IMG/VR virus record: IMGVR_UViG_3300026512_000002
Location: 1-64,000 of that record
DNA length: 64,000 nt
Reading direction: 5' to 3' (one strand)
Shown: one piece after another, positions 1 to 38,555 of the stretch
Position numbering within the stretch: position 1 is the first letter of the stretch
Layout of the letters: each line of letters starts with the position of its first letter
Notes under the pieces: generated by a model
What the model was told of the DNA's origin: nothing
Seen by the model: the letters and a program-made list of their open reading frames with translations, nothing else
Databases searched by the model: none
Program-made: the position numbers and the translations under genes

Positions 1-862
1 ATTAAGTATACAATATAAAAAACCTGATGATTATTGGAAAAGGATAAAATACGATAATGGATTAAAGACATATTTTGAAAGCTCTAAGAAGTATTGGAAG
101 AAGTGGGAGTATGATGAAAATGGGTTAGAAACTTATTATGAAGACTCTAATGGTTATTGGGAAAGGATAAAATATGATGAAAATGGACTGGAAACATATC
201 ATGAAGACTCTAATGGTTATTGGGAAAAGACGGAGTATGAAAATGGGTTGAAAACATATTTTGAAAAATCTAATGGTTTTTGGGAAAAGTGGGAGTATGA
301 AAATGGGTTAGAAACTTATTATGAAGATTCTAATGGTTATTGGGAAAAGTGGGAGTATGAAAATGGGTTAGAAACATATTTTGAAGACTCTACTGGTTAT
401 TGGAAGAAGTTGAGGTATGATGAAAATGGATTGGAAACTTATTTTGAGGACTCTACTGGTTATTGGAAGAAGTGGGAGTATGAAAATGGGTTGAAAACAT
501 ATTTTGAAAAATCTAATGGTTTTTGGGAAAAGTGGGAGTATGAAAATGGGTTGAAAACATATTTTGAAAACTCTAATGGTTTTTGGAAGAAGTGGGAGTA
601 TGAAAATGGGTTAGAAACTTATTATGAAAGCTCTAATGGTTTTTGGAAGAAGTGGAGGTATAATGAGAATGGATTGAAAACTTATCACGAAGACTCTGAT
701 GGTTATTGGAAGAAGTGGAGGTATAATGAGAACGGGTTAATGACATATTATGAAAATTCTGATAATGAAAAAAGAAAGTGGGAGTATGATGAAAATGGTG
801 AATTGATATATTTTACCAATTTCACTAAAAGAGATATTAATATAGATATAGAGTACAAATAA
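1..862 (+). CDS. Trp/Tyr/Glu-rich 20-21-aa tandem-repeat protein (5'-truncated by window edge)
   Basis: Frame 2 is open from base 2 (LSIQYKKPDDYWKRIKYDNG...) into ORF 248..862. Repeats of the form YENGLxTYxExSxGxWxKWE. LSIQY and the C-terminal YFTNFxKRDIxIxIxYK match the downstream paralogue. Confidence 0.85.
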   Translation, partial: LSIQYKKPDDYWKRIKYDNGLKTYFESSKKYWKKWEYDENGLETYYEDSNGYWERIKYDENGLETYHEDSNGYWEKTEYENGLKTYFEKSNGFWEKWEYENGLETYYEDSNGYWEKWEYENGLETYFEDSTGYWKKLRYDENGLETYFEDSTGYWKKWEYENGLKTYFEKSNGFWEKWEYENGLKTYFENSNGFWKKWEYENGLETYYESSNGFWKKWRYNENGLKTYHEDSDGYWKKWRYNENGLMTYYENSDNEKRKWEYDENGELIYFTNFTKRDINIDIEYK

Positions 863-875
863 TAAAGGAGAAATT

Positions 876-1946
876 ATGAATAAAACAGAGATATTAGTAA
901 ATGCATGTAGAAGTGGTTTAAACGACTATTTTCAAAGTGGATTAGATAAAGTAGATCTAGAAAAAGTGAAAAAAATAACAGTGTATGATAGCAATGATTT
1001 TAGTAATCTAAAATGGTTAGTTGAAAAAATGAAACTGACATTAAGCATACAATATGAAGACTTTAATGGTTCTTGGGAACTGTTGGAATATGAAAATGGG
1101 TTGAAAACTTATTATGGTAAATCTGATGGTTCTTGGGAACTGTTGGAATATGAAAATGGGTTGAAAACTTATTATGGTAAATCTGACGGATATTGGGAAA
1201 AGTGGGGATATGAAAATGGGGTGGAAACTTATTATGAAAACTCTGATGGGTTTTGGAAGAAGATAGCATATGAAAATGGGTTGAAAACCCATCATGAGAA
1301 ATCCAATGGTTCTTGGCAAAAGTGGGGATATGAAAATGGGTTGAAAACTTATTATGAAAATTCTAATGGTTATTGGGAAAAGTGGGGATATGAAAATGGG
1401 TTGAAAACTTATTATGAAAATTCTAATGGTTATTGGGAAAAGTGGGGATATGAAAATGGGTTGAAAACTTATTATGAAAGCTCTAATGGTCATTGGCAAA
1501 AGTGGGGATATGAAAATGGGTTGAAAACTTATTATAAAAATTCTGATGGATATTGGGAAAAGTGGGGATATGAAAATGGGTTGAAAACTTATTATGAAAG
1601 CTCTGATGGTCATTGGGAAAAGTGGGGATATGAAAATGGGTTGAAAACTTATTATGGTAAATCTGACGGATATTGGGAAAAGTGGGGATATGAAAATGGG
1701 TTGAAAACTTATTATGAAAGCTCTGATGGATATTGGAAGAAGTGGGGATATGAAAATGGGTTGAAAACTCACCATGAGAAGTCCAATGGTTCTTGGCAAA
1801 AGTGGGGATATGAAAATGGGTTGAAAACTTATTACGAAGATTCTGATAATGAAAAAGGGAAGTGGGAATATGATAAAAAAGGCAACTTTATATATTTCAC
1901 CAATTTCATTAAAAGAGATATTGCGATAAATATAAAATATAAATAA
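876..1946 (+). CDS. Trp/Tyr-rich 20-aa tandem-repeat protein (paralogue of upstream gene)
   Basis: SD AAGGAG before ATG; about 13-14 in-frame 60-bp units encoding YENGLKTYYE(N/S)S(D/N)GYWEKWG. Confidence 0.9.
   Translation: MNKTEILVNACRSGLNDYFQSGLDKVDLEKVKKITVYDSNDFSNLKWLVEKMKLTLSIQYEDFNGSWELLEYENGLKTYYGKSDGSWELLEYENGLKTYYGKSDGYWEKWGYENGVETYYENSDGFWKKIAYENGLKTHHEKSNGSWQKWGYENGLKTYYENSNGYWEKWGYENGLKTYYENSNGYWEKWGYENGLKTYYESSNGHWQKWGYENGLKTYYKNSDGYWEKWGYENGLKTYYESSDGHWEKWGYENGLKTYYGKSDGYWEKWGYENGLKTYYESSDGYWKKWGYENGLKTHHEKSNGSWQKWGYENGLKTYYEDSDNEKGKWEYDKKGNFIYFTNFIKRDIAINIKYK
1050..1870 (+). repeat. Coding 60-bp tandem repeat array
   Basis: Successive 60-nt lines 1081-1860 are nearly identical (agtggggatatgaaaatgggttgaaaacttattat...). 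Confidence 0.95.
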
Positions 1947-1956
1947 TATTTATATT

Positions 1957-4034: not shown

Positions 4035-7000
4035 ATGGTAAGAGAAAAAGTTCGTGGATTAAAAAGGCGTGAAATTCGAGATATTAAACTTTATATTTTA
4101 GCTAAAAAGATTAGTATTGATAAATTATCAAAACTGGTTAATATAAGCAAATATAGATTATCCAAATGTCTTAAATATGGAAACAACAAATTTACAATGT
4201 ATGAAATTTCCAATATTAAAAAAATTATTAATGATAATAACAATGAACAAATGAAAAGTGTGGAATTAAATAATAGTGATTTTTTTAAACAAAATATATC
4301 TGAAGAAATATGGAGAAGTAAATATAAAGCGGTTAAAGATAAAACAGTATTTGATACATTTGATAGGATTATCGGAACATTGTTTGACAATACTGATGAG
4401 TTTGATATAGTTATCGCATCAAAATTACGCAATATGATGCATGAGAACAGATTTTTACCTGCTGGCAGAATATTATCCAATACTGGTGATGACACTAAAC
4501 CTATTGCTAGTTTAATAAATTGTCTTGTTATGGAACAAATACCTGATTCTATGAATGGTATAATGAGTATTGCTAGAGAAGCTGCTTTAAGTCTTCAAAG
4601 AGGAAATGGTGTCGGTTATGACTTTTCATCGATAAGGCCTAAAGGTGCTTATGTAGCTGGTGTTGGTGCGGATACTAGTGGACCATTACCATTTATGGAA
4701 ATATTTAACACTATGGCTAAAACTATAATGTCTGCTGGTGGCAGAAGATCTGCTCAGATGGGAGTTATGGATATACATCATCCCGATATTGTAGATTTTA
4801 TTACATCTAAACAAAAAGAGGGTGTTCTGAAACAATTCAATTTATCTGTCAATATAACTAATGATTTTATGAACCAATTAAAATTATTCCAAAAAACTGG
4901 TGATAAAAAATATGAGTTATGGGAATTGTGGTTTTGGGTTAAATTATCACCAACAGATACTGTTCATAGAAGTAGAGTTAGTGTTATTAATAAAGGTGAA
5001 TTACCATATGATCTTAAACATAGAGATAATAATTATTTTGTATTTGATAAAACTCATATCGAAGTAAAATATGGTAATTGTTCTCATAATACTATTTATG
5101 AGAAAAAAGTTTTTAATATTATTAGAATTACAGAATTATGGGATATTATAATGCGTTCTACTTATGATTATGCTGAGCCTGGAGTATTGTTTTTAGATAG
5201 AGCAAATGAATATAATCTGCTAAAGAATTATGAAAATATTAGAGCTACAAATCCATGTGTTGTTGGGGATACGAAAGTTGCTGTTGTCAATAGAGGGGCT
5301 GTTACTATAAAAGAGCTTGCTGATAAAGGTGAGGATGTTATGGTATATGCATATGATAATGATCTTAACAGAAGAGTTGTTAAAAGAATGAGAAGGCCTA
5401 GATTAACTGGTGAAAATATTGGCGTGTATAAAATATTATTTAATTCTGGAGATAGTATAATAGTTACAGGTAATCATGAAATTTTAATGAGTAATGGTGG
5501 TTATGTTGAAGCTAAAGATTTAGAACGTGGTAGTAGCGTCCATGTGTCACAGATTAATTTTGATAAAACGTCTCATATCGAGTTTAATCCCAATGATTAT
5601 GATATTAAAGTCACTAGAGTTGATGATGAGGATGTTTCGTTTATAGAACGTACTTGTGAGCATTGTGGTAAAAGTTTCTGGGTGAGATATGACGAAAGAG
5701 AAAAAGCATTCTGTTCTGGTAAATGTTCCGATAGTTATACTGAAATTAAAAATGGTTGGAGGAACAATGTTAAATCTAGAGTAGATTATCAAAACATGGG
5801 TACCATGTTCGAATATTTGGTTGTTGATATAGAGTATGTTGGTACTAGAAATGTGTATAATGGTACTGTTGATGATGTTCATAATTTTTATGTTGTATTA
5901 GATGATAGTGATCCTAATAATGTTACTATGCTGAATAATATGCAGTGTGGTGAGCAAATATTACCATTTAATGGTGCTTGTTTATTGGGATCCATGAACC
6001 TTGTTAAGTATATTGATGGTGATAGTTTTAATTTTGCTAATTTTTATAATGATACTATTTTTGCTAATATTTTATTAGATAGGGTGGTTGAACGACATGG
6101 GTTAGCATTAACAGGACAAATTGCTGAAATAACTAGTAAACGAAGGCATGGTTTAGGTTTTACTGGATTAGGATCTATGTTCCATATACTAGGTATTGAT
6201 TATGGCAGTATTGAATCAATAGAAATGACTAGAAATATAAGTATGATTTTAGCATATGGTAGTTTAGTTGCTAATGCTAAGTTATCCAAGATTTCAGGAT
6301 CTTTTAAAATTGATAATATGAATAATTTTATTGAAGAATTTAATAATAGTAAATATTATACTCATCTTATAGATAATATTAAGAGTAGTGGGTTTGGTGA
6401 TCATATTATGAATGTTGATACGTTATTAAATATGGTCAATACATATGGTTTGAGATATTCACATGCTACATCAATAGCGCCTACTGGGACTATAAGTTTG
6501 GTTAGTAATAATGTTTCTAATGGTATAGAACCACCGTTTGCATCAGCATATAGTAGAAATGTTGTTGACGCAAACGATACTAGTATAAGTAAAACTGAAC
6601 GAATTATGGATTATGCATTTATGATGGCTTGGGAAAAATCCAACATGGATTATGATGAATTTCTTAAAGAATATAATATGAGTCATAAATTTGCTCAAGA
6701 TATATCACCTAGTGATCATATTGCTATTCAGGCTGCTGCTCAAGAATTTATTGATTCAAGTATTAGTAAGACTATAAACTGTCCCACTAATATGAAATTT
6801 GAGGATTTTAAAAATATATATTTGGAAGCATATGATAATAATTTGAAAGGTCTGACAACATTTAGGTTTAATCCTGAAGTTAGATCTGCTGTATTAATAA
6901 CAGATGACGATATGATGAATATGAATATAAAGATTATGTTTAAAGATGGTTCTAGTAAAATATATAAAGCTAGTGATCAAGTGGAATATAAAGGAAGAGT

Positions 7001-7037
7001 TGTGACAGCATATAATTTATACGATATGTATAAATAA
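4035..7037 (+). CDS. nrdJ: Adenosylcobalamin-dependent (class II) ribonucleotide reductase, intein-containing, with N-terminal HTH-like extension
   Basis: Motifs FLPAGRIL, SLINC, GxGVGYDFS, RRSAQM, FNLSV, AEPGVLF, ATNP[intein]CGEQ, ACLLGS, SIAPTGTISL, ISKTIN; followed by an NrdJb-type gene. Confidence 0.93.
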   Translation: MVREKVRGLKRREIRDIKLYILAKKISIDKLSKLVNISKYRLSKCLKYGNNKFTMYEISNIKKIINDNNNEQMKSVELNNSDFFKQNISEEIWRSKYKAVKDKTVFDTFDRIIGTLFDNTDEFDIVIASKLRNMMHENRFLPAGRILSNTGDDTKPIASLINCLVMEQIPDSMNGIMSIAREAALSLQRGNGVGYDFSSIRPKGAYVAGVGADTSGPLPFMEIFNTMAKTIMSAGGRRSAQMGVMDIHHPDIVDFITSKQKEGVLKQFNLSVNITNDFMNQLKLFQKTGDKKYELWELWFWVKLSPTDTVHRSRVSVINKGELPYDLKHRDNNYFVFDKTHIEVKYGNCSHNTIYEKKVFNIIRITELWDIIMRSTYDYAEPGVLFLDRANEYNLLKNYENIRATNPCVVGDTKVAVVNRGAVTIKELADKGEDVMVYAYDNDLNRRVVKRMRRPRLTGENIGVYKILFNSGDSIIVTGNHEILMSNGGYVEAKDLERGSSVHVSQINFDKTSHIEFNPNDYDIKVTRVDDEDVSFIERTCEHCGKSFWVRYDEREKAFCSGKCSDSYTEIKNGWRNNVKSRVDYQNMGTMFEYLVVDIEYVGTRNVYNGTVDDVHNFYVVLDDSDPNNVTMLNNMQCGEQILPFNGACLLGSMNLVKYIDGDSFNFANFYNDTIFANILLDRVVERHGLALTGQIAEITSKRRHGLGFTGLGSMFHILGIDYGSIESIEMTRNISMILAYGSLVANAKLSKISGSFKIDNMNNFIEEFNNSKYYTHLIDNIKSSGFGDHIMNVDTLLNMVNTYGLRYSHATSIAPTGTISLVSNNVSNGIEPPFASAYSRNVVDANDTSISKTERIMDYAFMMAWEKSNMDYDEFLKEYNMSHKFAQDISPSDHIAIQAAAQEFIDSSISKTINCPTNMKFEDFKNIYLEAYDNNLKGLTTFRFNPEVRSAVLITDDDMMNMNIKIMFKDGSSKIYKASDQVEYKGRVVTAYNLYDMYK
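5256..5945 (+). mobile_element. Mini-intein (230 aa) at the NP|CGE catalytic site of NrdJ
   Basis: Starts CVVGDT (block A), has VTGNH (block B) and VYNGTVDDVHNF (block F), ends ...NNMQ before Cys+1. No LAGLIDADG/HNH domain visible. Confidence 0.9.
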
Positions 7038-13765: not shown

Positions 13766-14112
13766 AAGTTATTTAATAATGAATCGTGCATTGGCAAGTG
13801 TTTCCGGCGGTTCATAGCATAGAATGCTACTTATAGGAAACAACACACATTTGTGTGTTCCATTGTAAAGTTGTAGCTCTGGTAGGAAGGAGCAGTGAGC
13901 GGACATTGTGTGTCGAAACATGTCGCGGCTCTTGGTAGAAATACCAGCGGTAATCAATCCGTCAGAACACGTAAACATGGCTGACTACCATGATTGCTGG
14001 AGTTGCTATCCTAAAAGCAACTCTTGAGTAAATATATACAACCCTATCTGCGTTTGCGATAGGGTTGTATATCATTAAGAAAAGAGGTTGATCCCCTCTT
14101 TTCTTTTTTTTT
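13766..14112 (+). ncRNA. Putative structured early ncRNA (~350 nt)
   Basis: TATATTAT at 13752; GC-enriched; helices include a perfect 15-bp stem 14034-14048/14058-14072; terminator AAGAAAAGAGG/CCTCTTTTCTT plus T-tract. Confidence 0.65.
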
Positions 14113-18936: not shown

Positions 18937-19293
18937 ATGAAAATTTTAGAACTCAAAACTTTAGATACAGCAACAACACAAGATTTTGATAAAGTGAAAA
19001 ATAACTTATATCAGAGATATATGGTTATTGATTCAAAGTTAAATAGAATTTTAGATATTTATATTGGTTATCGAGGTAGTTATACAATGGTTGTTTTGCA
19101 AGGATCAACTTCAACAGAGTCATTTTCAGGAGTATCAGTTAGTAGGAATGGTTATTTATCATATTGTTTACTAAGTGCCTTTAAAAAGGCTGGTTTTAAA
19201 TTCGATAACTATGATTATGGGGAAGAAACGCGTAGTATTATAGAACTTGTAGCCAAAAAAATAACTAGAAAAAAATTCAAAATATTTTGTTAA
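18937..19293 (+). CDS. Hypothetical early protein
   Basis: SD AGGAGG; TATATTAT-N6-G at 18842. Confidence 0.75.
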   Translation: MKILELKTLDTATTQDFDKVKNNLYQRYMVIDSKLNRILDIYIGYRGSYTMVVLQGSTSTESFSGVSVSRNGYLSYCLLSAFKKAGFKFDNYDYGEETRSIIELVAKKITRKKFKIFC

Positions 19294-19342
19294 GGAGCTA
19301 ATAGTCAGGTTCCTATAATCGTATATATATGTATTACATATA

Positions 19343-19357
19343 TATATTATACTATTG
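19343..19357 (+). promoter_or_regulatory. Early (virion-RNAP-type) promoter YATATTAN-N6-G
   Basis: TATATTAT-actatt-G. The same motif with G at +7 occurs at 18315, 18842, 22395(-), 28699, 29516, ~43317, 51179 and ~62530. Confidence 0.65.
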
Positions 19358-20237
19358 TATGGCGGAAATATTTTACGAAACGTCAATACTATGGGAAAGC
19401 GTATCCCTAAAAAAAACAGGCCGCACTGGCGTACCAGGAACACCAAGTAGAGATCTTGGTCAACAAAAAAATCCGTTTGGCCAACGAAAATGATCCATGT
19501 TGTCTGGGAGTATTAGTATGCTCCATTGAAGGACAGTCTCTGGTGATAATGGCAAAAGGTCGAAAGGCCTGGAAAGAAGACGAAATTCGTAACAATGTCT
19601 AAGATAATGGCATTGGGGTATAAAGGGCGGTGGCCTGGAAGTCCTACGATATAAGTCTTTTTTACATAGGTGTATCTTTGATATATTTATGTAACGCTTT
19701 TTCCGTTCAAATGATGAGAAAAGCTATGCTTAATGGCGAAAGCCAAAAAGTAAGCTTTAAGATCATCAATATTGATCGGGTGAAGCAACTCCTACATAAT
19801 AATGATTGGACAAGTGCCATTGGGCACGAAGATGTCGCAATCATTGTTTCTAAAGAATTGGGAATGGAGGTTAAACATAACCGAATTTCCCATTCTTTAG
19901 AAAAGGAGGATGTCTTGATTTTAAGGCAGTATTTCGGAGGGCGTTTGCCCGAAGGAACTACTACCTTAAATGAAGATCAGCTCAAGTTATTGAGCTGGGT
20001 AGAAATTACTCTTAGCAAGTAATTTCTATTTATCCTTCTAAGCTAACAGTTTAATTCGGTTTGACTAACCGAAGTATATTGTTAGTAGGAGTGGAAACAA
20101 AAAAACCTAATAGGTCGGCCAGGTAGGAATGGCCGTTGACTAGACATAGTCTTAAAGAGAGTTAGTCACTCTCAATATTCCGATCCATCAAAAAAAAACA
20201 CCACCCGTTCTGGGTGGTGTTACTAATCCTTTTTTTT
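19357..20237 (+). other. Highly structured early transcript enclosing acrIII-1 (~320-nt 5' and ~200-nt 3' folded regions)
   Basis: Early promoter, continuous helices, 5'/3' end pairing (19359-19372 with 20174-20188), terminator AACACCACCC/GGGTGGTGTT. Confidence 0.7.
19678..20022 (+). CDS. acrIII-1: AcrIII-1 viral ring nuclease (DUF1874; degrades cA4, anti-type III CRISPR)
   Basis: MIYLCNAFSVQM, SAIGH (catalytic His), NRI, LEKED and GGRLPEG match the SIRV1 gp29/STIV B116 family; TTG start after AGGTG. Confidence 0.9.
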   Translation: MIYLCNAFSVQMMRKAMLNGESQKVSFKIINIDRVKQLLHNNDWTSAIGHEDVAIIVSKELGMEVKHNRISHSLEKEDVLILRQYFGGRLPEGTTTLNEDQLKLLSWVEITLSK

Positions 20238-20276
20238 ATCATTAAACAATCTATTAATACATTATATAGGATTAAT

Positions 20277-21398
20277 ATGGAATTTGTAAAAGGCAATATA
20301 GAAATAAGTGATTTACCTACAGGTTTATCAGATGAGATATTGAGTAAAATAGATACTATTATTAAAATAAATGATAGTATTAAAGGTTTTATATGCTCCA
20401 CTGAACCAATACCTATCTTTGTGGGGTATAAGAATTTTGGTTTACCATCAGGTTGTTTTGAAGAATATTGTAAAAAACTTAATTTAAAAACAATGGTTAT
20501 TGAGTATAATGGTGAGCGTATATTTATAGATATTAGATCAAAATTATTTGTAGATACAGTAAATGGTGATTCTATACAACCATATGTTGATTATGATCTA
20601 AATCCTGATATAATAAATATATCTACAAATACTGTTGGTAACATCACCATTTATGGTGAATGTTTTGATAGTAATATGGGTGTTATTATTGATGATGTGT
20701 TAGATGTGGTTAATATAGTATGTGATAAACCAAATGAAATAATATTGACATATAATACATATGACGATGTTGGTGAAACGGTGATAGAACTTGTACGGGG
20801 AAGTACTAGATCTTTTGGTAAAAAAATAAAAGTAAAAATATCGGATATTGTCAAAGGTAGTGGCCAACCTGGTGTTTTTTTAACAAATTTTGAAAATTGT
20901 AAAAATGGTGAGAATTTATGGGGTGTTGAATGGGATACAAAAGTATTTGGTAAAATATCTTCAGTTGAATCATTTTTTAAATCATCAAAAGCTGGTACGC
21001 CTAGTGTTGGTACAGGTCCTAATGATGTAAATGTTTTTACTAACAGTAAATGTTATATGTACACTGAGCGTAGTGGTGAAAATTATAATAGTGGTCAATA
21101 TGCTACTGTTACTACTAATAATTTTGCTATATTAGATGAGGTAACCTTTGAATACCATCTAGCTACTAATAATACCAATGTTGAAGTGTTTTTAAGAGCA
21201 TATAATGTCAAAACCATGAATTGGGACATTTTATGGTCACATTCTGGACCTGGTGTTCATAAACAAAATGATAAAGCAAGTTTGATAGAAATAAAAAATA
21301 TAAATAATAATTATAATATGCTTCAATTTTATTTTGGAGAGACTAATAATTGGGGTGGTGATCTAGCATTAAGTAATATTAAAATAGTGTCTAAATAA
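20277..21398 (+). CDS. Virion protein with IPT-like and C-terminal MAM-like domain
   Basis: TPSVGTGP...YMYTERS and GDLALSNI MAM-like motifs; late promoter at 20245; paralogue of 24397..25527. Confidence 0.65.
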   Translation: MEFVKGNIEISDLPTGLSDEILSKIDTIIKINDSIKGFICSTEPIPIFVGYKNFGLPSGCFEEYCKKLNLKTMVIEYNGERIFIDIRSKLFVDTVNGDSIQPYVDYDLNPDIINISTNTVGNITIYGECFDSNMGVIIDDVLDVVNIVCDKPNEIILTYNTYDDVGETVIELVRGSTRSFGKKIKVKISDIVKGSGQPGVFLTNFENCKNGENLWGVEWDTKVFGKISSVESFFKSSKAGTPSVGTGPNDVNVFTNSKCYMYTERSGENYNSGQYATVTTNNFAILDEVTFEYHLATNNTNVEVFLRAYNVKTMNWDILWSHSGPGVHKQNDKASLIEIKNINNNYNMLQFYFGETNNWGGDLALSNIKIVSK

Positions 21399-28441: not shown

Positions 28442-28706
28442 TTTCCCTCCGTTAAAAAAGATTTATTTGTAACTATATGTTATCAATCATATTAATTAGT
28501 CACATATATGTAACTTGGCAAGTTTACATTGTCATACTAAATGTCTCCCACAATATATGTAGAGGTTATCAGTTTGTAAAAATTTATTATAGTTTGTTAA
28601 TGAATATGATACATGATTATAGAAATAATATGTAATTAATTAATATATAAAATTATACTATCATTAGTCTATAATAGCATAATAGCTATATTTAAACATA
28701 TATTAA

Positions 28707-29373
28707 GGTGTTGTAGTAGGACATATATACGAGGTGATCGTTTTATATGATCCGTAAATGTTTGAGCATGATAGTCAACGATCATGTTAATTTACAACTA
28801 CAAACATCTATCTAAAGCCAGCATAGATGTAAAACTTAATGCTGGGTAGACGTAATAGTTCCATTGGGGAGTGATTTACGCTAAGTTCGGATAGAAGGTT
28901 GGATTATGAGTTGTGTGTTACGCAATGAATATGAAAACTAGGAATATGAACTTAAGGCACCTCATGAGTATAACTTCTCATAATTGGTGTTTGAATATAC
29001 TGGATACTAGAGAAAAGTGTCCAGTATGTGGTGAAACCACCACTTGTTTAGCCGTAATGGTTACTCAAGAAGGTGGTCTAACCACTTCACTTAAAGAGGA
29101 GTGCCCTAGTTGTTTTAAAAAAAGAACTGGGTCTTCTTTAAGCGAAGTTATAACACTAGACTATTGGGATATAGTCTAGTATCACCAATATGACCAACAG
29201 TCTATAATGGTCATAGAACGCTTAATTCCGGCAACTAATAGGGATTCGCAGTAATAGGCGTTAGTGGTAACACCACAAAGGAGCTATAAGAAATAGCTGA
29301 TGATGAGTCTACTTGTCTGTAGTGGATAATTCAAAGGGAAGCAGTTGATCAACTATTCCCATTTCTTTTTTTT
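28707..29373 (+). ncRNA. Large structured early RNA (~660 nt), possibly carrying a Zn-ribbon ORF
   Basis: TATATTAA-N6-G (28699-28713); many helices (28997-29008/29016-29027; ACTAGACTAT/ATAGTCTAGT; CTTAAAGAGGA/TCTTCTTTAAG); terminator GGGAA..TTCCC plus T-tract. Confidence 0.7.
28946..29179 (+). CDS. Possible small Zn-ribbon protein embedded in structured RNA
   Basis: KCPVCGE...ECPSCFKK paired CxxC motifs; start codon uncertain. Confidence 0.45.
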   Translation: MNLRHLMSITSHNWCLNILDTREKCPVCGETTTCLAVMVTQEGGLTTSLKEECPSCFKKRTGSSLSEVITLDYWDIV

Positions 29374-29591: not shown

Positions 29592-29714
29592 ATGAAATAT
29601 TCTGATTTTAAAAAAAGACTGGCAGAAATGTCAGCCTTAGAGAAATCCATTTACTTAACTGCGTCACTGCAGTCAAGTAAATGGATTTCTATTCATCTAA
29701 AATATTTTAGATGA
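29592..29714 (+). CDS. 40-aa small protein (MKYSDFKKRLAEMSALEKSIYLTASLQSSKWISIHLKYFR), absent from the ORF track
   Basis: Strong SD AAGGAGG; own early motif (29516) and terminator (29720-29744). Confidence 0.6.
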   Translation: MKYSDFKKRLAEMSALEKSIYLTASLQSSKWISIHLKYFR

Positions 29715-29814
29715 ATAGAGGGGGGTAACCCCCATTTTTTTTTTCGCATTCACTATATAATAATTGTGTTTTCATAGAAAGTTATTAACCAATTAATTAA
29801 AAAAAAATCTTTTA

Positions 29815-36640: not shown

Positions 36641-38365
36641 TTAAACAATATTACTTATGATTATGTTTCCAAATTTTTTATCAGAATTATTGGGTAGTCC
36701 TATACGTATATATAGTTCTCCACTTCTCACAGTTGAACCAAATGTACATTTTTTAATATTTGTAGTTGATTCGGAATATACCATACCTTTATCACCATCA
36801 TTGACTGGTGACCCTACACCAGGATATGAAGAGTTGCCATTTAACCACCCTGTAACACCTTCAACTTTATAGTATATTTCAATCCCATTGGTTTCAACAC
36901 CTGACCATGTACCAATGGGATTTGGCAATGTTAATGTGAACGCACTGTTATTGTTCAATGTTACTGGTTTAAATGTAACCCATCTAGTACCACTGCCCAT
37001 ACCGGTACTATAGTCTGGTCCAGCAGTAGGGTTGTTTGTACTATAATCTCCATTAGGTGTACCGTATCTATTATCTAACATTTGTAATTCATCAACATAT
37101 GTTGATCGTAATGAAACAGTTGAATCAAATGAACCACCGTAGCCATTGGTAGGATATTGACCTGTTCCACTTATCACTCTAGGAGTTTCATCGCTAATAG
37201 TATCTATTCTAGCATTAGTATTAGTAGCTAACGGTGTTCCAAGTATAGATTTAGAATTACGACCCATTATATTTATAATTATATTTTCAACATAAATATT
37301 ATTGATAGTTGTTGTAGTAATATTATTCATAGTAACAGATGTGTAGGCTGTCGGTATAATAGATAGTGACACATCTATATTGTTTATTGCTAATGATTCG
37401 ATTCTAGACAAAGCGTTAATATAATGGCTACGAACAGCATCATCTATAGTATATGTACAATCTAATGTATCACCAACATCTAAACTAGGTACACCTGAAA
37501 CATATCTGGTGCATGATGCTGGTAAACCTATACTTGGCGAACTGATATTTGCATTGTCAGGATCATCAATATGCACATGTTTATCTGGAGTATTACCTGT
37601 AATACTATGTTTCATCACAAAAATATGTTCATCTACACTCAATGGTGTAACTGGTAAAATATATGCTTCTAGTTGAGAATATAACCCTTCACCAGCAACA
37701 CCTACATATGGATCAGTGTCAGATGTTATGAATAGATCATTATCTGAACCAACATCGTTATTGGTTGTTAACGTTATCGACCCCATATTCGTACTATCTA
37801 TTTCAGCATCTAAAACACCGTTAGCACCATCACCGAAAGCTTGAGACACATATGCTCTAGGCGTATTGTCATCAATACAATCAGCATGTGTTGTTCCTGT
37901 ACCAGATTCTAATGCTGTATAAAGATTATCTATTATCAATACTAATGTTGATAGATCTGGTGGTGGTGGTGGTGCTAATTTTTTCAACATTGTGTTTAAA
38001 TCATCTATAGCATCATCTTTTTTATAAGTGTTGTCGGCTGGCCATTGAAAAAATCCATCAGTATAGGTACCATCTGTAGGTGACCCTAATGTATCACTAC
38101 CACTACCACTAGAAAATTCAACCCACCCAGTATTATCTAATGTATTTAGCAGTTGATATGTTTTAGCTGAACCTGTACCATCATCTTCAACTGTACAAAA
38201 CATACCAATATATCTTCGTTCTGGTATTATACTGTCTCTATCAACAATATCTAGTTTATGGTGAACACCTCCCAATATTTCATTAGAATGTGCTGATGGT
38301 ATTGGATCATTGGGATCTTGAGGTCTAATAGGTGCTGTGATTAAGGTTCCGATATTATTAGGCAT
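36641..38365 (-). CDS. Virion structural protein
   Basis: DRDSIIPERRYIGMFC head motif; LGSPTDGTYTDG; beta-rich body. Confidence 0.65.
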   Translation of the reverse strand: MPNNIGTLITAPIRPQDPNDPIPSAHSNEILGGVHHKLDIVDRDSIIPERRYIGMFCTVEDDGTGSAKTYQLLNTLDNTGWVEFSSGSGSDTLGSPTDGTYTDGFFQWPADNTYKKDDAIDDLNTMLKKLAPPPPPDLSTLVLIIDNLYTALESGTGTTHADCIDDNTPRAYVSQAFGDGANGVLDAEIDSTNMGSITLTTNNDVGSDNDLFITSDTDPYVGVAGEGLYSQLEAYILPVTPLSVDEHIFVMKHSITGNTPDKHVHIDDPDNANISSPSIGLPASCTRYVSGVPSLDVGDTLDCTYTIDDAVRSHYINALSRIESLAINNIDVSLSIIPTAYTSVTMNNITTTTINNIYVENIIINIMGRNSKSILGTPLATNTNARIDTISDETPRVISGTGQYPTNGYGGSFDSTVSLRSTYVDELQMLDNRYGTPNGDYSTNNPTAGPDYSTGMGSGTRWVTFKPVTLNNNSAFTLTLPNPIGTWSGVETNGIEIYYKVEGVTGWLNGNSSYPGVGSPVNDGDKGMVYSESTTNIKKCTFGSTVRSGELYIRIGLPNNSDKKFGNIIISNIV

Positions 38366-38461
38366 ATTATCTCCTAAAAAAATAAAAAAAAAGGAGGATA
38401 GTTATTAAAACTATCCTCTTATATAATAATATTTAAATAATAAGAAGTACTAAAAAAAACT

Positions 38462-38555
38462 CATTCCATTGCTTATGGTATTTTAATCATAACACATTCC
38501 ATTGCTTATGGTATTTTAATCATAACACATTCCATTGCTTATGGTATTTTAATCA
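38462..38555. repeat. 33-bp tandem repeat x2.8
   Basis: CATTCCATTGCTTATGGTATTTTAATCATAACA repeated exactly, with no spacers. Confidence 0.95.

What the first reader, a model, noticed from the sequence alone, without database searches (positions are those of the whole stretch)
19357..20237. AcrIII-1 ring nuclease encoded inside an almost fully base-paired ~880-nt transcript
Seen: the RBS and TTG start sit in a 15-bp hairpin (19662-19676/19680-19694, three G-U pairs). The CDS contains a 12-bp perfect stem (19847-19858/19892-19903), an 8-bp stem (19978-19985/19990-19997) and an 11-bp stem across the stop codon (20000-20010/20018-20028). Long-range pairs tie the CDS to the 3' UTR (ACTCCTAC 19788/GTAGGAGT 20085; AGGAGGAT 19904/ATCCTTCT 20032), and the 5' and 3' ends pair (19359-19372/20174-20188). 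Known: AcrIII-1 destroys cA4, which activates single-strand RNases such as Csx1, and type III complexes need accessible ssRNA targets. Inference: the anti-CRISPR mRNA is armoured against the system it inhibits. The occluded RBS may also be a switch opened by a ligand, by cleavage or by upstream translation.
Basis: partly seen in the sequence, partly recalled or inferred. Interest (0 to 1): 0.9.

Follow-up and report, generated by a model that had tools for sequence, protein, structure and literature searches.

The report
Hairpin-packed AcrIII-1 anti-CRISPR gene
A giant phage carries a gene for a known anti-CRISPR enzyme (AcrIII-1, which destroys the cA4 alarm signal) whose codons fold the message into a near-continuous chain of hairpins; relatives in many other phages show the same thing, which suggests the message itself was shaped by selection, possibly to survive RNA-directed defence.

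Summary
The ORF TTG 19678-20022 is a real AcrIII-1/DUF1874 ring nuclease. It scores above the Pfam cut-off, the catalytic His and the cA4-contact residues are conserved, and the AlphaFold model matches PDB 6SCF. The coding sequence folds about 50 kcal/mol better than synonymous-codon shuffles (z -10 to -12). It is the most structured segment of the 64-kb window. The Shine-Dalgarno sequence is locked in a 15-bp hairpin. "Almost fully base-paired 880 nt" overstates it: 66% of bases pair, and the 305-nt leader is barely above chance (z -1.95). The excess lies in the CDS and the 3' UTR. The new result is that this is a family trait. In 52 DUF1874 genes from other phage and MAG contigs, the CDS is more structured than neighbouring ORFs (mean z -2.95 vs -1.15, p 1e-7; 22 of 27 clusters). 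The structured zone coincides with the gene, GC3 is raised in AT-rich genomes, and the hairpins differ between lineages. Selection for RNA structure as such is well supported. The "armour against cA4-activated RNases" reading is plausible but untested. No ligand switch or known RNA family was found.

The parts
19322..19346 (.). Perfect 12-bp-arm AT palindrome (TATATATATGTA-T-TACATATATATA) overlapping the promoter-like motif. It could be an operator or merely AT-rich low complexity.
   Evidence: I7
19341..19351 (+). TATATATTATA motif, a probable phage promoter element. A transcription start near 19355-19362 is inferred from it.
   Evidence: six exact copies in the window. The five on the plus strand (11808, 13750, 14148, 19341, 43315) lie between ORFs, and three of them sit 45-75 nt upstream of a start codon. 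Matches with up to 1 mismatch exceed every one of 100 shuffles (57 vs 40.7).
19357..19661 (+). 5' leader of 305 nt, GC about 0.40. No convincing ORF and no known RNA family. Only marginally more structured than chance. It contains A-rich single-stranded runs.
19662..19694 (+). 15-bp hairpin (3 G-U pairs, dG -13.4 kcal/mol) that sequesters the SD AGGTG (19668-19672). The TTG start (19678-19680) lies at the 3-nt loop.
19678..20022 (+). AcrIII-1 / DUF1874 ring-nuclease CDS (114 codons plus TAA). It folds into six consecutive local hairpins: 19696-19786, 19799-19847, 19847-19903, 19912-19977, 19978-19997 and 19998-20030. There is no unpaired run of 8 nt or more inside the CDS.
19788..19795 (+). 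5' arm of a long-range helix (ACTCCTAC) that pairs with 20085-20092 (GTAGGAGT) in the 3' UTR.
   Evidence: mean pair probability 0.85
19904..19911 (+). 5' arm of a long-range helix (AGGAGGAT) that pairs with 20032-20039 (ATCCTTCT) in the 3' UTR.
   Evidence: mean pair probability 0.97
20023..20196 (+). Structured 3' UTR with hairpins 20044-20084, 20116-20135, 20138-20151 and 20157-20173. Bases 20174-20188 pair with the 5' end (19359-19372).
   Evidence: (z -5.2)
20197..20237 (.). GC-rich 10-bp hairpin (20197-20221). An A9 run abuts it upstream, and a T8 run (20230-20237) lies 8 nt downstream. It is a canonical intrinsic terminator on the minus strand and only a non-canonical one on the plus strand, so the 3' end of the acr transcript is uncertain.

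Best explanation
This is a functional-looking AcrIII-1 (DUF1874) cA4 ring-nuclease gene. It sits in a self-contained, GC-enriched unit (about 19341-20237) of an AT-rich 228-kb phage contig. Its coding sequence and 3' UTR have been shaped by selection, mostly at synonymous sites, to fold into a dense chain of local RNA hairpins, and translation initiation is gated by an SD-sequestering hairpin. The most likely pay-off is a message that offers almost no single-stranded RNA. That would make it long-lived and hard to attack for ssRNA-specific nucleases, including the cA4-activated Csx1/Csm6-type RNases that its product switches off. It would also make it a poor hybridisation target for RNA-guided effectors. 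The phage could then keep making ring nuclease while the collateral RNases are active. Shown here: the protein's identity, the excess structure, its confinement to the gene, and its recurrence across the family with lineage-specific hairpins. Inferred: that the structure acts at the RNA level in this particular gene, that it confers nuclease resistance, and that type III defence is the selective agent.
For: Protein identity. Pfam PF08960 scores 48.2 bits against a cut-off of 26. Sequence matches to the PDB include 2J6B, 2X4I and 6SCF, with H50 aligned to the catalytic H47 of SIRV1 gp29 and R89 to R85 (residue roles from 10.1101/778746). N6, S9, H50, R69, R89 and E92 are invariant in 33 homologues. 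The AF2 model has pLDDT 92.9 and a TM-score of 0.78 to 6SCF. Structure of this gene. CDS z is -9.9 to -11.8 against synonymous shuffles. It ranks first of 55 ORFs and first of 400 bins in the window. P(unpaired) is 0.26 and there is no single-stranded run of 8 nt or more in the CDS. Family-wide pattern. 52 DUF1874 CDSs have mean z -2.95 against -1.15 for 257 neighbouring ORFs, p 1.1e-7. Matched for GC the values are -3.09 against -0.80, p 1.6e-7. The result replicated in two independent collections and holds in 22 of 27 clusters at 60% identity, p 1.9e-4. In ten loci the structured zone maps onto the acr gene and its immediate flanks. RNA level and selection. Across 17 structured homologues the excess is larger on the sense strand than the antisense strand (-28.2 vs -22.6 kcal/mol, p 0.003). 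In L030/L061/L051 the hairpins are kept through a G-C to G-U change, or rebuilt from different sequence and even different amino acids. Hairpin positions are only loosely shared across the family. GC3 is raised by 12 points in AT-rich loci, and Acr GC exceeds locus GC in 33 of 35 such loci. Among control ORFs, z is independent of GC. Biochemical premise. Csx1 cleaves ssRNA but not dsRNA (PMC4712672). Target RNA structure lowers type III Cmr activation by up to 100-fold at 37 C (PMC8682760).
Against: There are no expression, RNA-probing or nuclease data, and every fold is a thermodynamic prediction of a naked, untranslated RNA. For the window CDS itself the sense and antisense excesses are equal (-50.1 vs -54.7 kcal/mol) and G-U pairs are few (8 of 119), so a DNA-level palindrome effect is not excluded for this gene. 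Experimentally validated or archaeal AcrIII-1 genes show little or no excess (SIRV1 gp29 z 0.0, AFV8 -1.3, THSA-485A -2.9). About 40% of the homologues have z above -2. This phage has a second hyper-structured small-gene island of unknown function (28690-29372), so the trait may not be specific to anti-CRISPR genes. Dense structure, an occluded SD and a TTG start should also depress translation, which sits awkwardly with a need for rapid Acr synthesis. Shielding one mRNA does not stop type III activation by other phage transcripts. The host and its CRISPR content are unknown.
Confidence: 0.4

Rival explanations
1. Expression control and ordinary mRNA stabilisation. The SD hairpin and TTG start keep translation low, because excess Acr is costly. 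The CDS and 3' UTR hairpins simply stabilise a short, monocistronic, poorly translated message against housekeeping RNases and Rho-dependent termination. There is no specific link to type III defence.
For: The SD has P(unpaired) 0.003. Structure is stronger in stand-alone acr genes than in tightly packed operons: upstream gap vs z gives rho -0.39, p 0.006, and mean z is -4.42 vs -2.48. Acr genes are known to be held in check, and Aca proteins bind RNA motifs in acr 5' UTRs (PMC13551039). A second small stand-alone gene in this phage, of unknown function, is also hyper-structured.
Against: SD occlusion is not shared by the homologues. Short neighbouring ORFs in the same loci do not show the excess (short controls mean z -1.20). 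DUF1874 genes inside tight operons are still more structured than controls (mean -2.48). No Aca-like HTH gene lies next to the window gene.
Confidence: 0.25
2. Hiding from RNA-guided recognition. DUF1874 is a conserved gene shared among many phages and therefore an attractive spacer target. A folded transcript is a poor hybridisation partner for type III or Cas13 crRNAs.
For: Target RNA structure lowers Cmr activation by up to two orders of magnitude at 37 C (PMC8682760). There is no single-stranded run of 8 nt or more in the CDS. Several lineages place a hairpin over the most conserved motif, SA[IV]GH.
Against: Any other phage transcript can still trigger type III immunity, so shielding one gene gains little. 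Synonymous drift already diversifies the nucleotide sequence. No spacer data were available.
Confidence: 0.12
3. DNA-level palindromes. The inverted repeats act in DNA, as cruciforms or single-strand hairpins affecting recombination, mobility or replication of a mobile gene cassette, and the RNA folding is a by-product.
For: In the window CDS the stems are almost all Watson-Crick (8 G-U of 119 pairs) and the antisense strand shows the same excess. The unit is compositionally foreign.
Against: Across 17 homologues the sense strand carries the larger excess and more G-U pairs (p 0.003). A conserved hairpin tolerates a G-C to G-U change, which would be an A-C mismatch on the other strand. Over the whole 881 nt, sense is -316.5 and antisense -273.4 kcal/mol. 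No flanking direct repeats or element ends were found. The structured zone follows the gene borders.
Confidence: 0.08
4. Compositional or horizontal-transfer artefact. The gene was recently acquired from a GC-richer donor and the apparent structure only reflects its composition.
For: GC is 0.37-0.40 in the island vs 0.25-0.29 in the flanks, and GC3 is 0.40 vs 0.14-0.26 in neighbouring genes.
Against: Both nulls preserve composition (dinucleotide shuffles and synonymous-codon shuffles) and still give z of -10 to -13. Control-ORF z does not depend on GC or on GC excess. The GC shift is in the same direction in 33 of 35 AT-rich loci.
Confidence: 0.03

Closest known systems
AcrIII-1 (DUF1874) viral ring nucleases: SIRV1 gp29 (PDB 6SCF, 2X4I), AFV3-109 (2J6B), STIV B116 (2J85), phage THSA-485A DUF1874
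   Same: Same Pfam family, same fold (TM 0.78 to 6SCF), and the catalytic His plus the Arg/Asn/Ser/Gln cA4 contacts are conserved. It is a small viral protein of about 110 aa.
   Different: Only 30-38% identical. It is encoded in a 228-kb AT-rich phage contig as a stand-alone unit with a 305-nt leader and a 175-nt 3' UTR. Its CDS is hyper-structured (z about -11), whereas SIRV1 gp29 (0.0), AFV8 (-1.3) and THSA-485A (-2.9) are not, or only mildly.
Crn2 domain of cellular Csx1-Crn2 fusions (PDB 8Y7F/8Y7G)
   Same: Same fold (TM 0.73-0.77).
   Different: Crn2 is the host-encoded domain version, fused to the RNase it regulates. The window protein is free-standing and phage-encoded.
Aca-controlled acr operons with regulatory RNA motifs in the 5' UTR (PMC13551039)
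   Same: An anti-CRISPR gene whose translation start is embedded in RNA structure, and an inverted repeat at the putative promoter (19322-19346).
   Different: No Aca/HTH gene was found nearby. The unusual structure is in the CDS and 3' UTR, not in a short 5' UTR motif. SD occlusion is not conserved among the homologues.
Highly structured coding RNAs: ssRNA phage genomes (MS2/Qbeta) and type I toxin mRNAs such as hok (from general knowledge, not tested here)
   Same: Coding sequence folded into consecutive hairpins, SD sequestration, long-range 5'-3' pairing, and structure linked to nuclease resistance and translational gating.
   Different: Those are RNA replicons or toxin messages. Here it is an mRNA of a dsDNA phage counter-defence gene, and the trait follows a protein family across unrelated phages.

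Membership tests
AcrIII-1 / DUF1874 (Pfam PF08960, STIV_B116-like) | Sequence match to the family HMM above the curated threshold | tested here: met
   48.2 bits vs cut-off 26, E 1.2e-12, profile positions 1-92 of 101. PHROG 5063 E 4.5e-19.
AcrIII-1 / DUF1874 (Pfam PF08960, STIV_B116-like) | The family's fold | tested here: met
   AF2 model pLDDT 92.9, pTM 0.83. The top 17 Foldseek PDB hits are all family members: 6SCF (TM 0.78, E 4e-11), 2J6B, 2X4I, 2J85 and the Csx1-Crn2 entries 8Y7F, 8Y7G and 8Y6Z.
AcrIII-1 / DUF1874 (Pfam PF08960, STIV_B116-like) | Absolutely conserved catalytic histidine (H47 of SIRV1 gp29) | tested here: met
   H50 aligns with H47. In 6SCF, the H47A variant, this position is Ala. 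H50 is invariant in 33 homologues. Its role is taken from 10.1101/778746.
AcrIII-1 / DUF1874 (Pfam PF08960, STIV_B116-like) | cA4-contacting residues (N8, S11, R66, Q81, R85 of gp29) | tested here: met
   N6, S9, R69, Q84 and R89 occupy the aligned positions.
AcrIII-1 / DUF1874 (Pfam PF08960, STIV_B116-like) | Dimeric enzyme that cleaves cA4 and blocks cA4-dependent type III immunity | not testable with these tools
   Needs a biochemical assay and a plasmid or phage challenge in a laboratory strain.
Acr-Aca operon | Adjacent aca gene (HTH or RHH regulator) | tested here: not met
   The neighbouring ORFs 18937-19293 and 20277-21398 and the leader ORFs have no HTH/RHH or any other significant Pfam/PHROG hit.
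Known structured RNA families (riboswitches, group I/II introns, ribozymes, GOLLD/ROOL-type large RNAs) | Covariance-model match | tested here: not met
   No Rfam hit at gathering thresholds in the whole window. With E up to 10 over 19100-20500, only terminator-driven, sub-threshold chance hits appear.
Translational repression by an SD-sequestering hairpin | SD and start codon inside a stable local hairpin | tested here: met
   15 bp, dG -13.4 kcal/mol, P(unpaired) of the SD 0.003. This is a prediction only; the effect on translation was not tested.
Rho-independent terminator ending the acr transcript | GC-rich stem immediately followed by a U-tract on the transcribed strand | tested here: inconclusive
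   Stem 20197-20221. On the plus strand the T8 run begins 8 nt after the stem; on the minus strand the T9 run follows directly.

The most novel reading that the evidence does not exclude
Dense whole-CDS RNA folding is an evolved counter-defence trait of phage ring-nuclease genes. The AcrIII-1 message is built to stay intact, and invisible to crRNAs, while cA4-activated single-strand RNases shred other transcripts, so that the phage can translate its way out of type III-induced dormancy. 'Armoured' mRNAs may then mark a wider class of anti-defence genes. The second hyper-structured orphan gene at 28913-29179 would be a candidate.
Probability: 0.25. Interest if true: 0.85.

Novelty: new variant of a known kind. 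Interest (0 to 1): 0.68.

Why it matters
AcrIII-1 is the best-known inhibitor of cyclic-oligoadenylate signalling, but only its protein has been studied. I found no report of unusual mRNA structure for it. A family-wide, gene-delimited excess of coding-sequence structure, rebuilt independently in different lineages, points to selection on the message itself. If that selection comes from cOA-activated RNases or from RNA-guided targeting, it adds an RNA-level layer to the phage-CRISPR arms race. It would also give a simple sequence signature (a GC3-enriched, hyper-structured small gene in an AT-rich phage) for finding new counter-defence genes. It is directly testable by comparing native with recoded genes in existing laboratory type III systems. 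If instead it reflects ordinary stabilisation of monocistronic messages, it is still a clear natural example of CDS-wide structure tuned at synonymous sites.

Tried and rejected
(1) Known RNA families. Rfam at gathering thresholds on the whole window gave nothing, and at E up to 10 on the region gave only terminator-like sub-threshold hits. Group I/II intron, riboswitch, ribozyme and large ornate RNA readings were therefore dropped. No tRNA or tmRNA was found.
(2) Leader as a coding region. The ORFs at 19329-19493, 19355-19450 and 19411-19602 have no Pfam hits and no SD.
(3) Leader as a conserved RNA. nhmmer with the leader and the 3' UTR against all 60 or so other loci found nothing. blastn against 50,697 phage records found nothing.
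(4) Close relatives for covariation. IMG/VR scans with the Acr protein and with both neighbouring proteins returned only the source contig. The 5.8-billion-protein search gave a nearest relative at 50% identity. No covariation test was therefore possible for this locus, and the L030/L061/L051 trio was used as a proxy.
(5) Mobile-element ends. No flanking direct repeats were found.
(6) Paralogy between the structured islands of the window. There is no sequence similarity.
(7) Alternative starts. GTG 19630 adds 16 non-conserved residues. ATG 19726, the database gene call P0001, removes the conserved N-terminal YLCNAFS motif. TTG 19678 reproduces the MIYLCNAFS N-terminus of P0002 and P0004.
(8) Promoter alignment with MAFFT was uninformative.
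(9) A conserved hairpin architecture across the family is only loosely supported.
(10) SD occlusion as a family trait is not supported.
(11) The first whole-window and control scans timed out and were rerun with smaller settings. Alignment A2 was too divergent for locus finding, and five GenBank-derived rows had to be dropped before structure prediction.
(12) Weak PDB sequence hits with E of 0.1 or more are chance-level and were ignored.
Full report
CONTEXT. The window is the first 64 kb of IMG/VR contig IMGVR_UViG_3300026512_000002 (227,696 bp). The contig is AT-rich (about 27% GC) and looks like a phage: it has virion and tail-fibre-like proteins and a ribonucleotide reductase carrying an intein. 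The finding lies in a GC-enriched island (0.36-0.40 GC against 0.25-0.29 in the flanks) between two plus-strand ORFs of unknown function (18937-19293 and 20277-21398).

THE PROTEIN. The ORF in frame with GTG 19630 matches Pfam PF08960 (STIV_B116-like, formerly DUF1874) from its residue 18 onward, at 48.2 bits against a cut-off of 26. Starting at TTG 19678 gives the N-terminus M-IYLCNAFS, the same as in its nearest relatives P0002 and P0004. This start is preceded by AGGTG (19668-19672) at a 5-nt spacing. The database gene call (P0001, 98 aa) starts further in and removes this conserved motif. phmmer against PDB sequences finds AFV3-109 (2J6B), SIRV1 gp29 (2X4I, 6SCF) and STIV B116 (2J85). H50 aligns with the catalytic H47, which is Ala in the H47A crystal 6SCF, and R89 aligns with R85. 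The roles of these residues are taken from 10.1101/778746. In an alignment of 33 homologues, N6, F8, S9, M12, G49, H50, R69, R89, L90, E92 and G93 are invariant. An AlphaFold2 model (pLDDT 92.9) has 6SCF as its best PDB match (TM 0.78, E 4e-11), followed only by other family members and the Crn2 domain of Csx1-Crn2. Membership of the AcrIII-1 family is therefore met on every criterion that can be tested in silico. Enzymatic activity is not testable here.

THE STRUCTURE AT THIS LOCUS. Folding 19357-20237 as RNA gives -316.5 kcal/mol against -215.9 +/- 7.5 for dinucleotide shuffles (z -13.3). The antisense strand gives -273.4 kcal/mol (z -10.9). The excess is unevenly spread. The leader 19357-19661 alone has z -1.95 (antisense +0.4), and the 3' UTR 20023-20196 has z -5.2. 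The CDS carries most of the signal. Against 100-300 shuffles that permute synonymous codons, keeping the protein, codon usage and GC, the native CDS folds at -128.9 kcal/mol against -78.5 +/- 5 (z -9.9 to -11.8). Recoding only the CDS within the full transcript costs 63 kcal/mol. The CDS is a chain of six local hairpins with mean P(unpaired) 0.26 and no single-stranded run of 8 nt or more. The SD has P(unpaired) 0.003 inside a -13.4 kcal/mol hairpin. Within the window, the bin 19841-20000 is the most structured of 400 bins (z -14.6; bin mean -0.8, sd 1.7). The gene is the most structured of 55 ORFs (z -11.1; ORF mean -1.0).

TRANSCRIPT LIMITS. The motif TATATATTATA occurs exactly six times in the window. 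The five plus-strand copies lie between ORFs, three of them 45-75 nt upstream of a start codon. One copy is at 19341-19351, which fits a start near 19357. The hairpin at 20197-20221 has its U-tract adjacent only on the minus strand, so termination of the acr transcript there is uncertain and read-through into the next gene is possible. No flanking direct repeats mark a mobile element.

WHAT IT IS NOT. There is no Rfam family, no tRNA or tmRNA, no coding potential with homologues in the leader, and no similar DNA in 50,697 phage records. The nearest homologues (50% identity or less) sit in tightly packed operons without such flanks. The leader and the 3' UTR have no counterparts in other acr loci. 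This leaves no support for a riboswitch-like ligand sensor.

THE FAMILY-WIDE PATTERN (the main new result). I applied the same synonymous-shuffle test to DUF1874 genes elsewhere. Among nine reference genes, the values ranged from 0.0 (SIRV1 gp29) and -1.3 (AFV8) to -5.0 (P0003) and -5.7 (Hydrogenobaculum phage 1). In 36 non-redundant IMG/VR loci, the acr CDS had mean z -2.61 against -1.16 for 183 neighbouring ORFs (Mann-Whitney p 6e-5; paired Wilcoxon p 7e-5). It was the most structured ORF of its locus in 14 of 36. An independent set of 16 loci from bacterial genome and MAG contigs (Clostridia, Saccharibacteria, Treponema and others) replicated this, at -3.70 against -1.14, p 2e-4. Pooled, the values are -2.95 against -1.15, p 1.1e-7. 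Matched for GC they are -3.09 against -0.80, p 1.6e-7. z is below -5 in 21% of acr genes against 2.3% of controls. Collapsed to 27 clusters at 60% identity, the acr gene is more structured than its own neighbours in 22 clusters (p 1.9e-4). Control z does not depend on GC or on GC excess. Sliding-window maps of ten loci show that the structured zone coincides with the acr gene, while the neighbours sit at z of about 0. In L047 the zone extends 400 nt upstream (z -16.6 for L047:2080-2495). The acr genes are also enriched in GC where the genome is AT-rich: 33 of 35 loci, by 9.6 points on average, and the slope of gene GC on locus GC is 0.72 against 1.01 for controls. The enrichment is mostly at third codon positions (+12 points). 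In the window, GC3 is 0.40 against 0.14-0.26 in neighbouring genes.

RNA OR DNA, CONSERVED OR REINVENTED. Across 17 structured homologues the excess is larger on the sense strand (-28.2 against -22.6 kcal/mol, p 0.003), with more G-U pairs. In the related genes L030, L061 and L051 (65% nucleotide identity between L030 and L051), the hairpin over the catalytic SCVGHADTA motif survives a G-C to G-U change. A hairpin near the N-terminus is kept although both the nucleotides and the amino acids differ. A third hairpin is replaced by a different local hairpin. Hairpin-loop positions are only loosely shared across the family. Together these results point to selection for being folded, at the RNA level, rather than for one conserved RNA motif. 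The caveat is that in the window CDS itself sense and antisense are equivalent (-50.1 against -54.7 kcal/mol; 8 G-U of 119 pairs). Strand specificity at this locus therefore comes only from the UTRs.

MECHANISM. Three things are shown: a ring-nuclease gene, excess structure that is selected, and a sequestered SD. The function of the structure is inferred. Csx1 cleaves ssRNA but not dsRNA (PMC4712672), and RNA structure can lower type III Cmr activation 100-fold at 37 C (PMC8682760). It also explains why this particular gene family would carry the trait: its product must be made while cA4-activated RNases are active. Several observations weigh against it. The archaeal-virus genes that certainly face Csx1 are unstructured, though at 75-80 C AU-rich hairpins would not hold. 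Many homologues lack the trait. Structure correlates with stand-alone position (rho -0.39), which also fits ordinary stabilisation of short monocistronic messages. This phage has a second hyper-structured small gene of unknown function. An occluded SD with a TTG start argues for restrained rather than maximal expression. I rank the explanations as follows: nuclease-resistant, poorly accessible message linked to RNA-directed defence, 0.40; generic expression control and stabilisation, 0.25; crRNA avoidance alone, 0.12; DNA-level palindromes, 0.08; compositional artefact, 0.03.

NOVELTY. The protein is a new member of a known family. The literature searches found no report of CDS-wide mRNA structure in AcrIII-1 or other acr genes. 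The known RNA-level control of acr genes concerns short 5' UTR motifs bound by Aca proteins (PMC13551039). I therefore class the finding as a new variant of a known kind. It is interesting mainly because the trait generalises across the family and can be tested directly with native and recoded genes.

LIMITS. All structures are thermodynamic predictions for isolated RNA. Control ORFs were called mechanically and may include some non-genes. Loci are not fully independent, and clustering only partly addresses this. Shuffle numbers were modest (20-40 per gene) in the large screens. No close relative of the window gene exists in the collections searched, so covariation could not be tested at this locus.

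Noticed in passing
window 28690-29372 (+): A second GC-richer, hyper-structured stand-alone unit. The 683 nt fold at -218.1 kcal/mol vs -160.0 for shuffles (z -7.7). It holds an orphan 77-88-aa Zn-ribbon-like ORF (28913/28946-29179; CPVC...CPSC) whose CDS has synonymous-shuffle z -8.05, second only to the acr gene among 55 ORFs. It has no Pfam or PHROG hit and no homologue other than itself in 5.8 billion proteins. It may be another gene of the same 'armoured message' kind.
   Followed up: partly
window 29592-29745 (+): A 40-aa ORF with a strong SD (AAAGGAGG) whose coding sequence contains a long hairpin (about 18 bp by eye) and a second palindrome, followed by a GC-rich terminator. The bin 29601-29760 has z -9.3. 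No Pfam hit.
   Followed up: partly
window 13780-14110 (+): A GC-rich (up to 0.42) non-coding island between two genes. It is preceded by the TATATATTATA promoter-like motif (13750) and ends in two terminator-like hairpins, so it is a candidate phage non-coding RNA of about 300 nt. No Rfam match.
   Followed up: partly
window 11808, 13750, 14148, 19341, 43315 (+) and 2043 (-): Exact copies of TATATATTATA. The five plus-strand copies lie in intergenic DNA, three of them 45-75 nt upstream of start codons. This is probably a promoter element of this phage.
   Followed up: partly
window 20190-20290 (-): A near-consensus sigma-70-like promoter on the minus strand (TTTACA-18-TATAAT, 20290-20261) faces the minus-strand terminator 20221-20197. 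Together they could give a roughly 60-nt RNA antisense to the acr 3' end. The only Rfam match is a sub-threshold Phe_leader-like hit (34 bits vs 55).
   Followed up: no
window 18-1950 (+): Long arrays of 60-nt (20-aa) tandem repeats spanning two adjacent ORFs (248-862 and 876-1946), with a repeated W/Y/G-rich peptide unit.
   Followed up: no
window 4035-7037 (+): A ribonucleotide reductase large subunit interrupted by an intein: the Intein_splicing domain matches residues 422-619 inside the barrel domain.
   Followed up: no
window 38451-38555 (+): Three tandem 33-nt repeats (TAATCATAACACATTCCATTGCTTATGGTATTT) in the intergenic DNA upstream of the minus-strand gene 36641-38365. They could be regulator-binding sites or iterons.
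   Followed up: no
L047:2080-2495 (IMGVR_UViG_3300031992_000156): Immediately upstream of another phage's DUF1874 gene lies a 400-nt run of seven or so near-perfect 11-15-bp hairpins with short loops (mostly 3 nt) (-193 vs -104 kcal/mol, z -16.6). It overlaps an unannotatable 92-aa ORF.
   Followed up: partly
L051 and L061 (both IMGVR_UViG_3300021440_000015): One 120-kb phage contig carries two diverged DUF1874 paralogues about 15 kb apart. Both have hyper-structured coding sequences (z -7.7 and -5.2).
   Followed up: partly
L063:2031-2101, L065/L066 near 2175-2257, L030:4907-5199: tRNA genes lie directly upstream of the DUF1874 gene in several Clostridia-derived loci. A group I intron lies 2 kb downstream of the acr gene in L030.
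   Followed up: no
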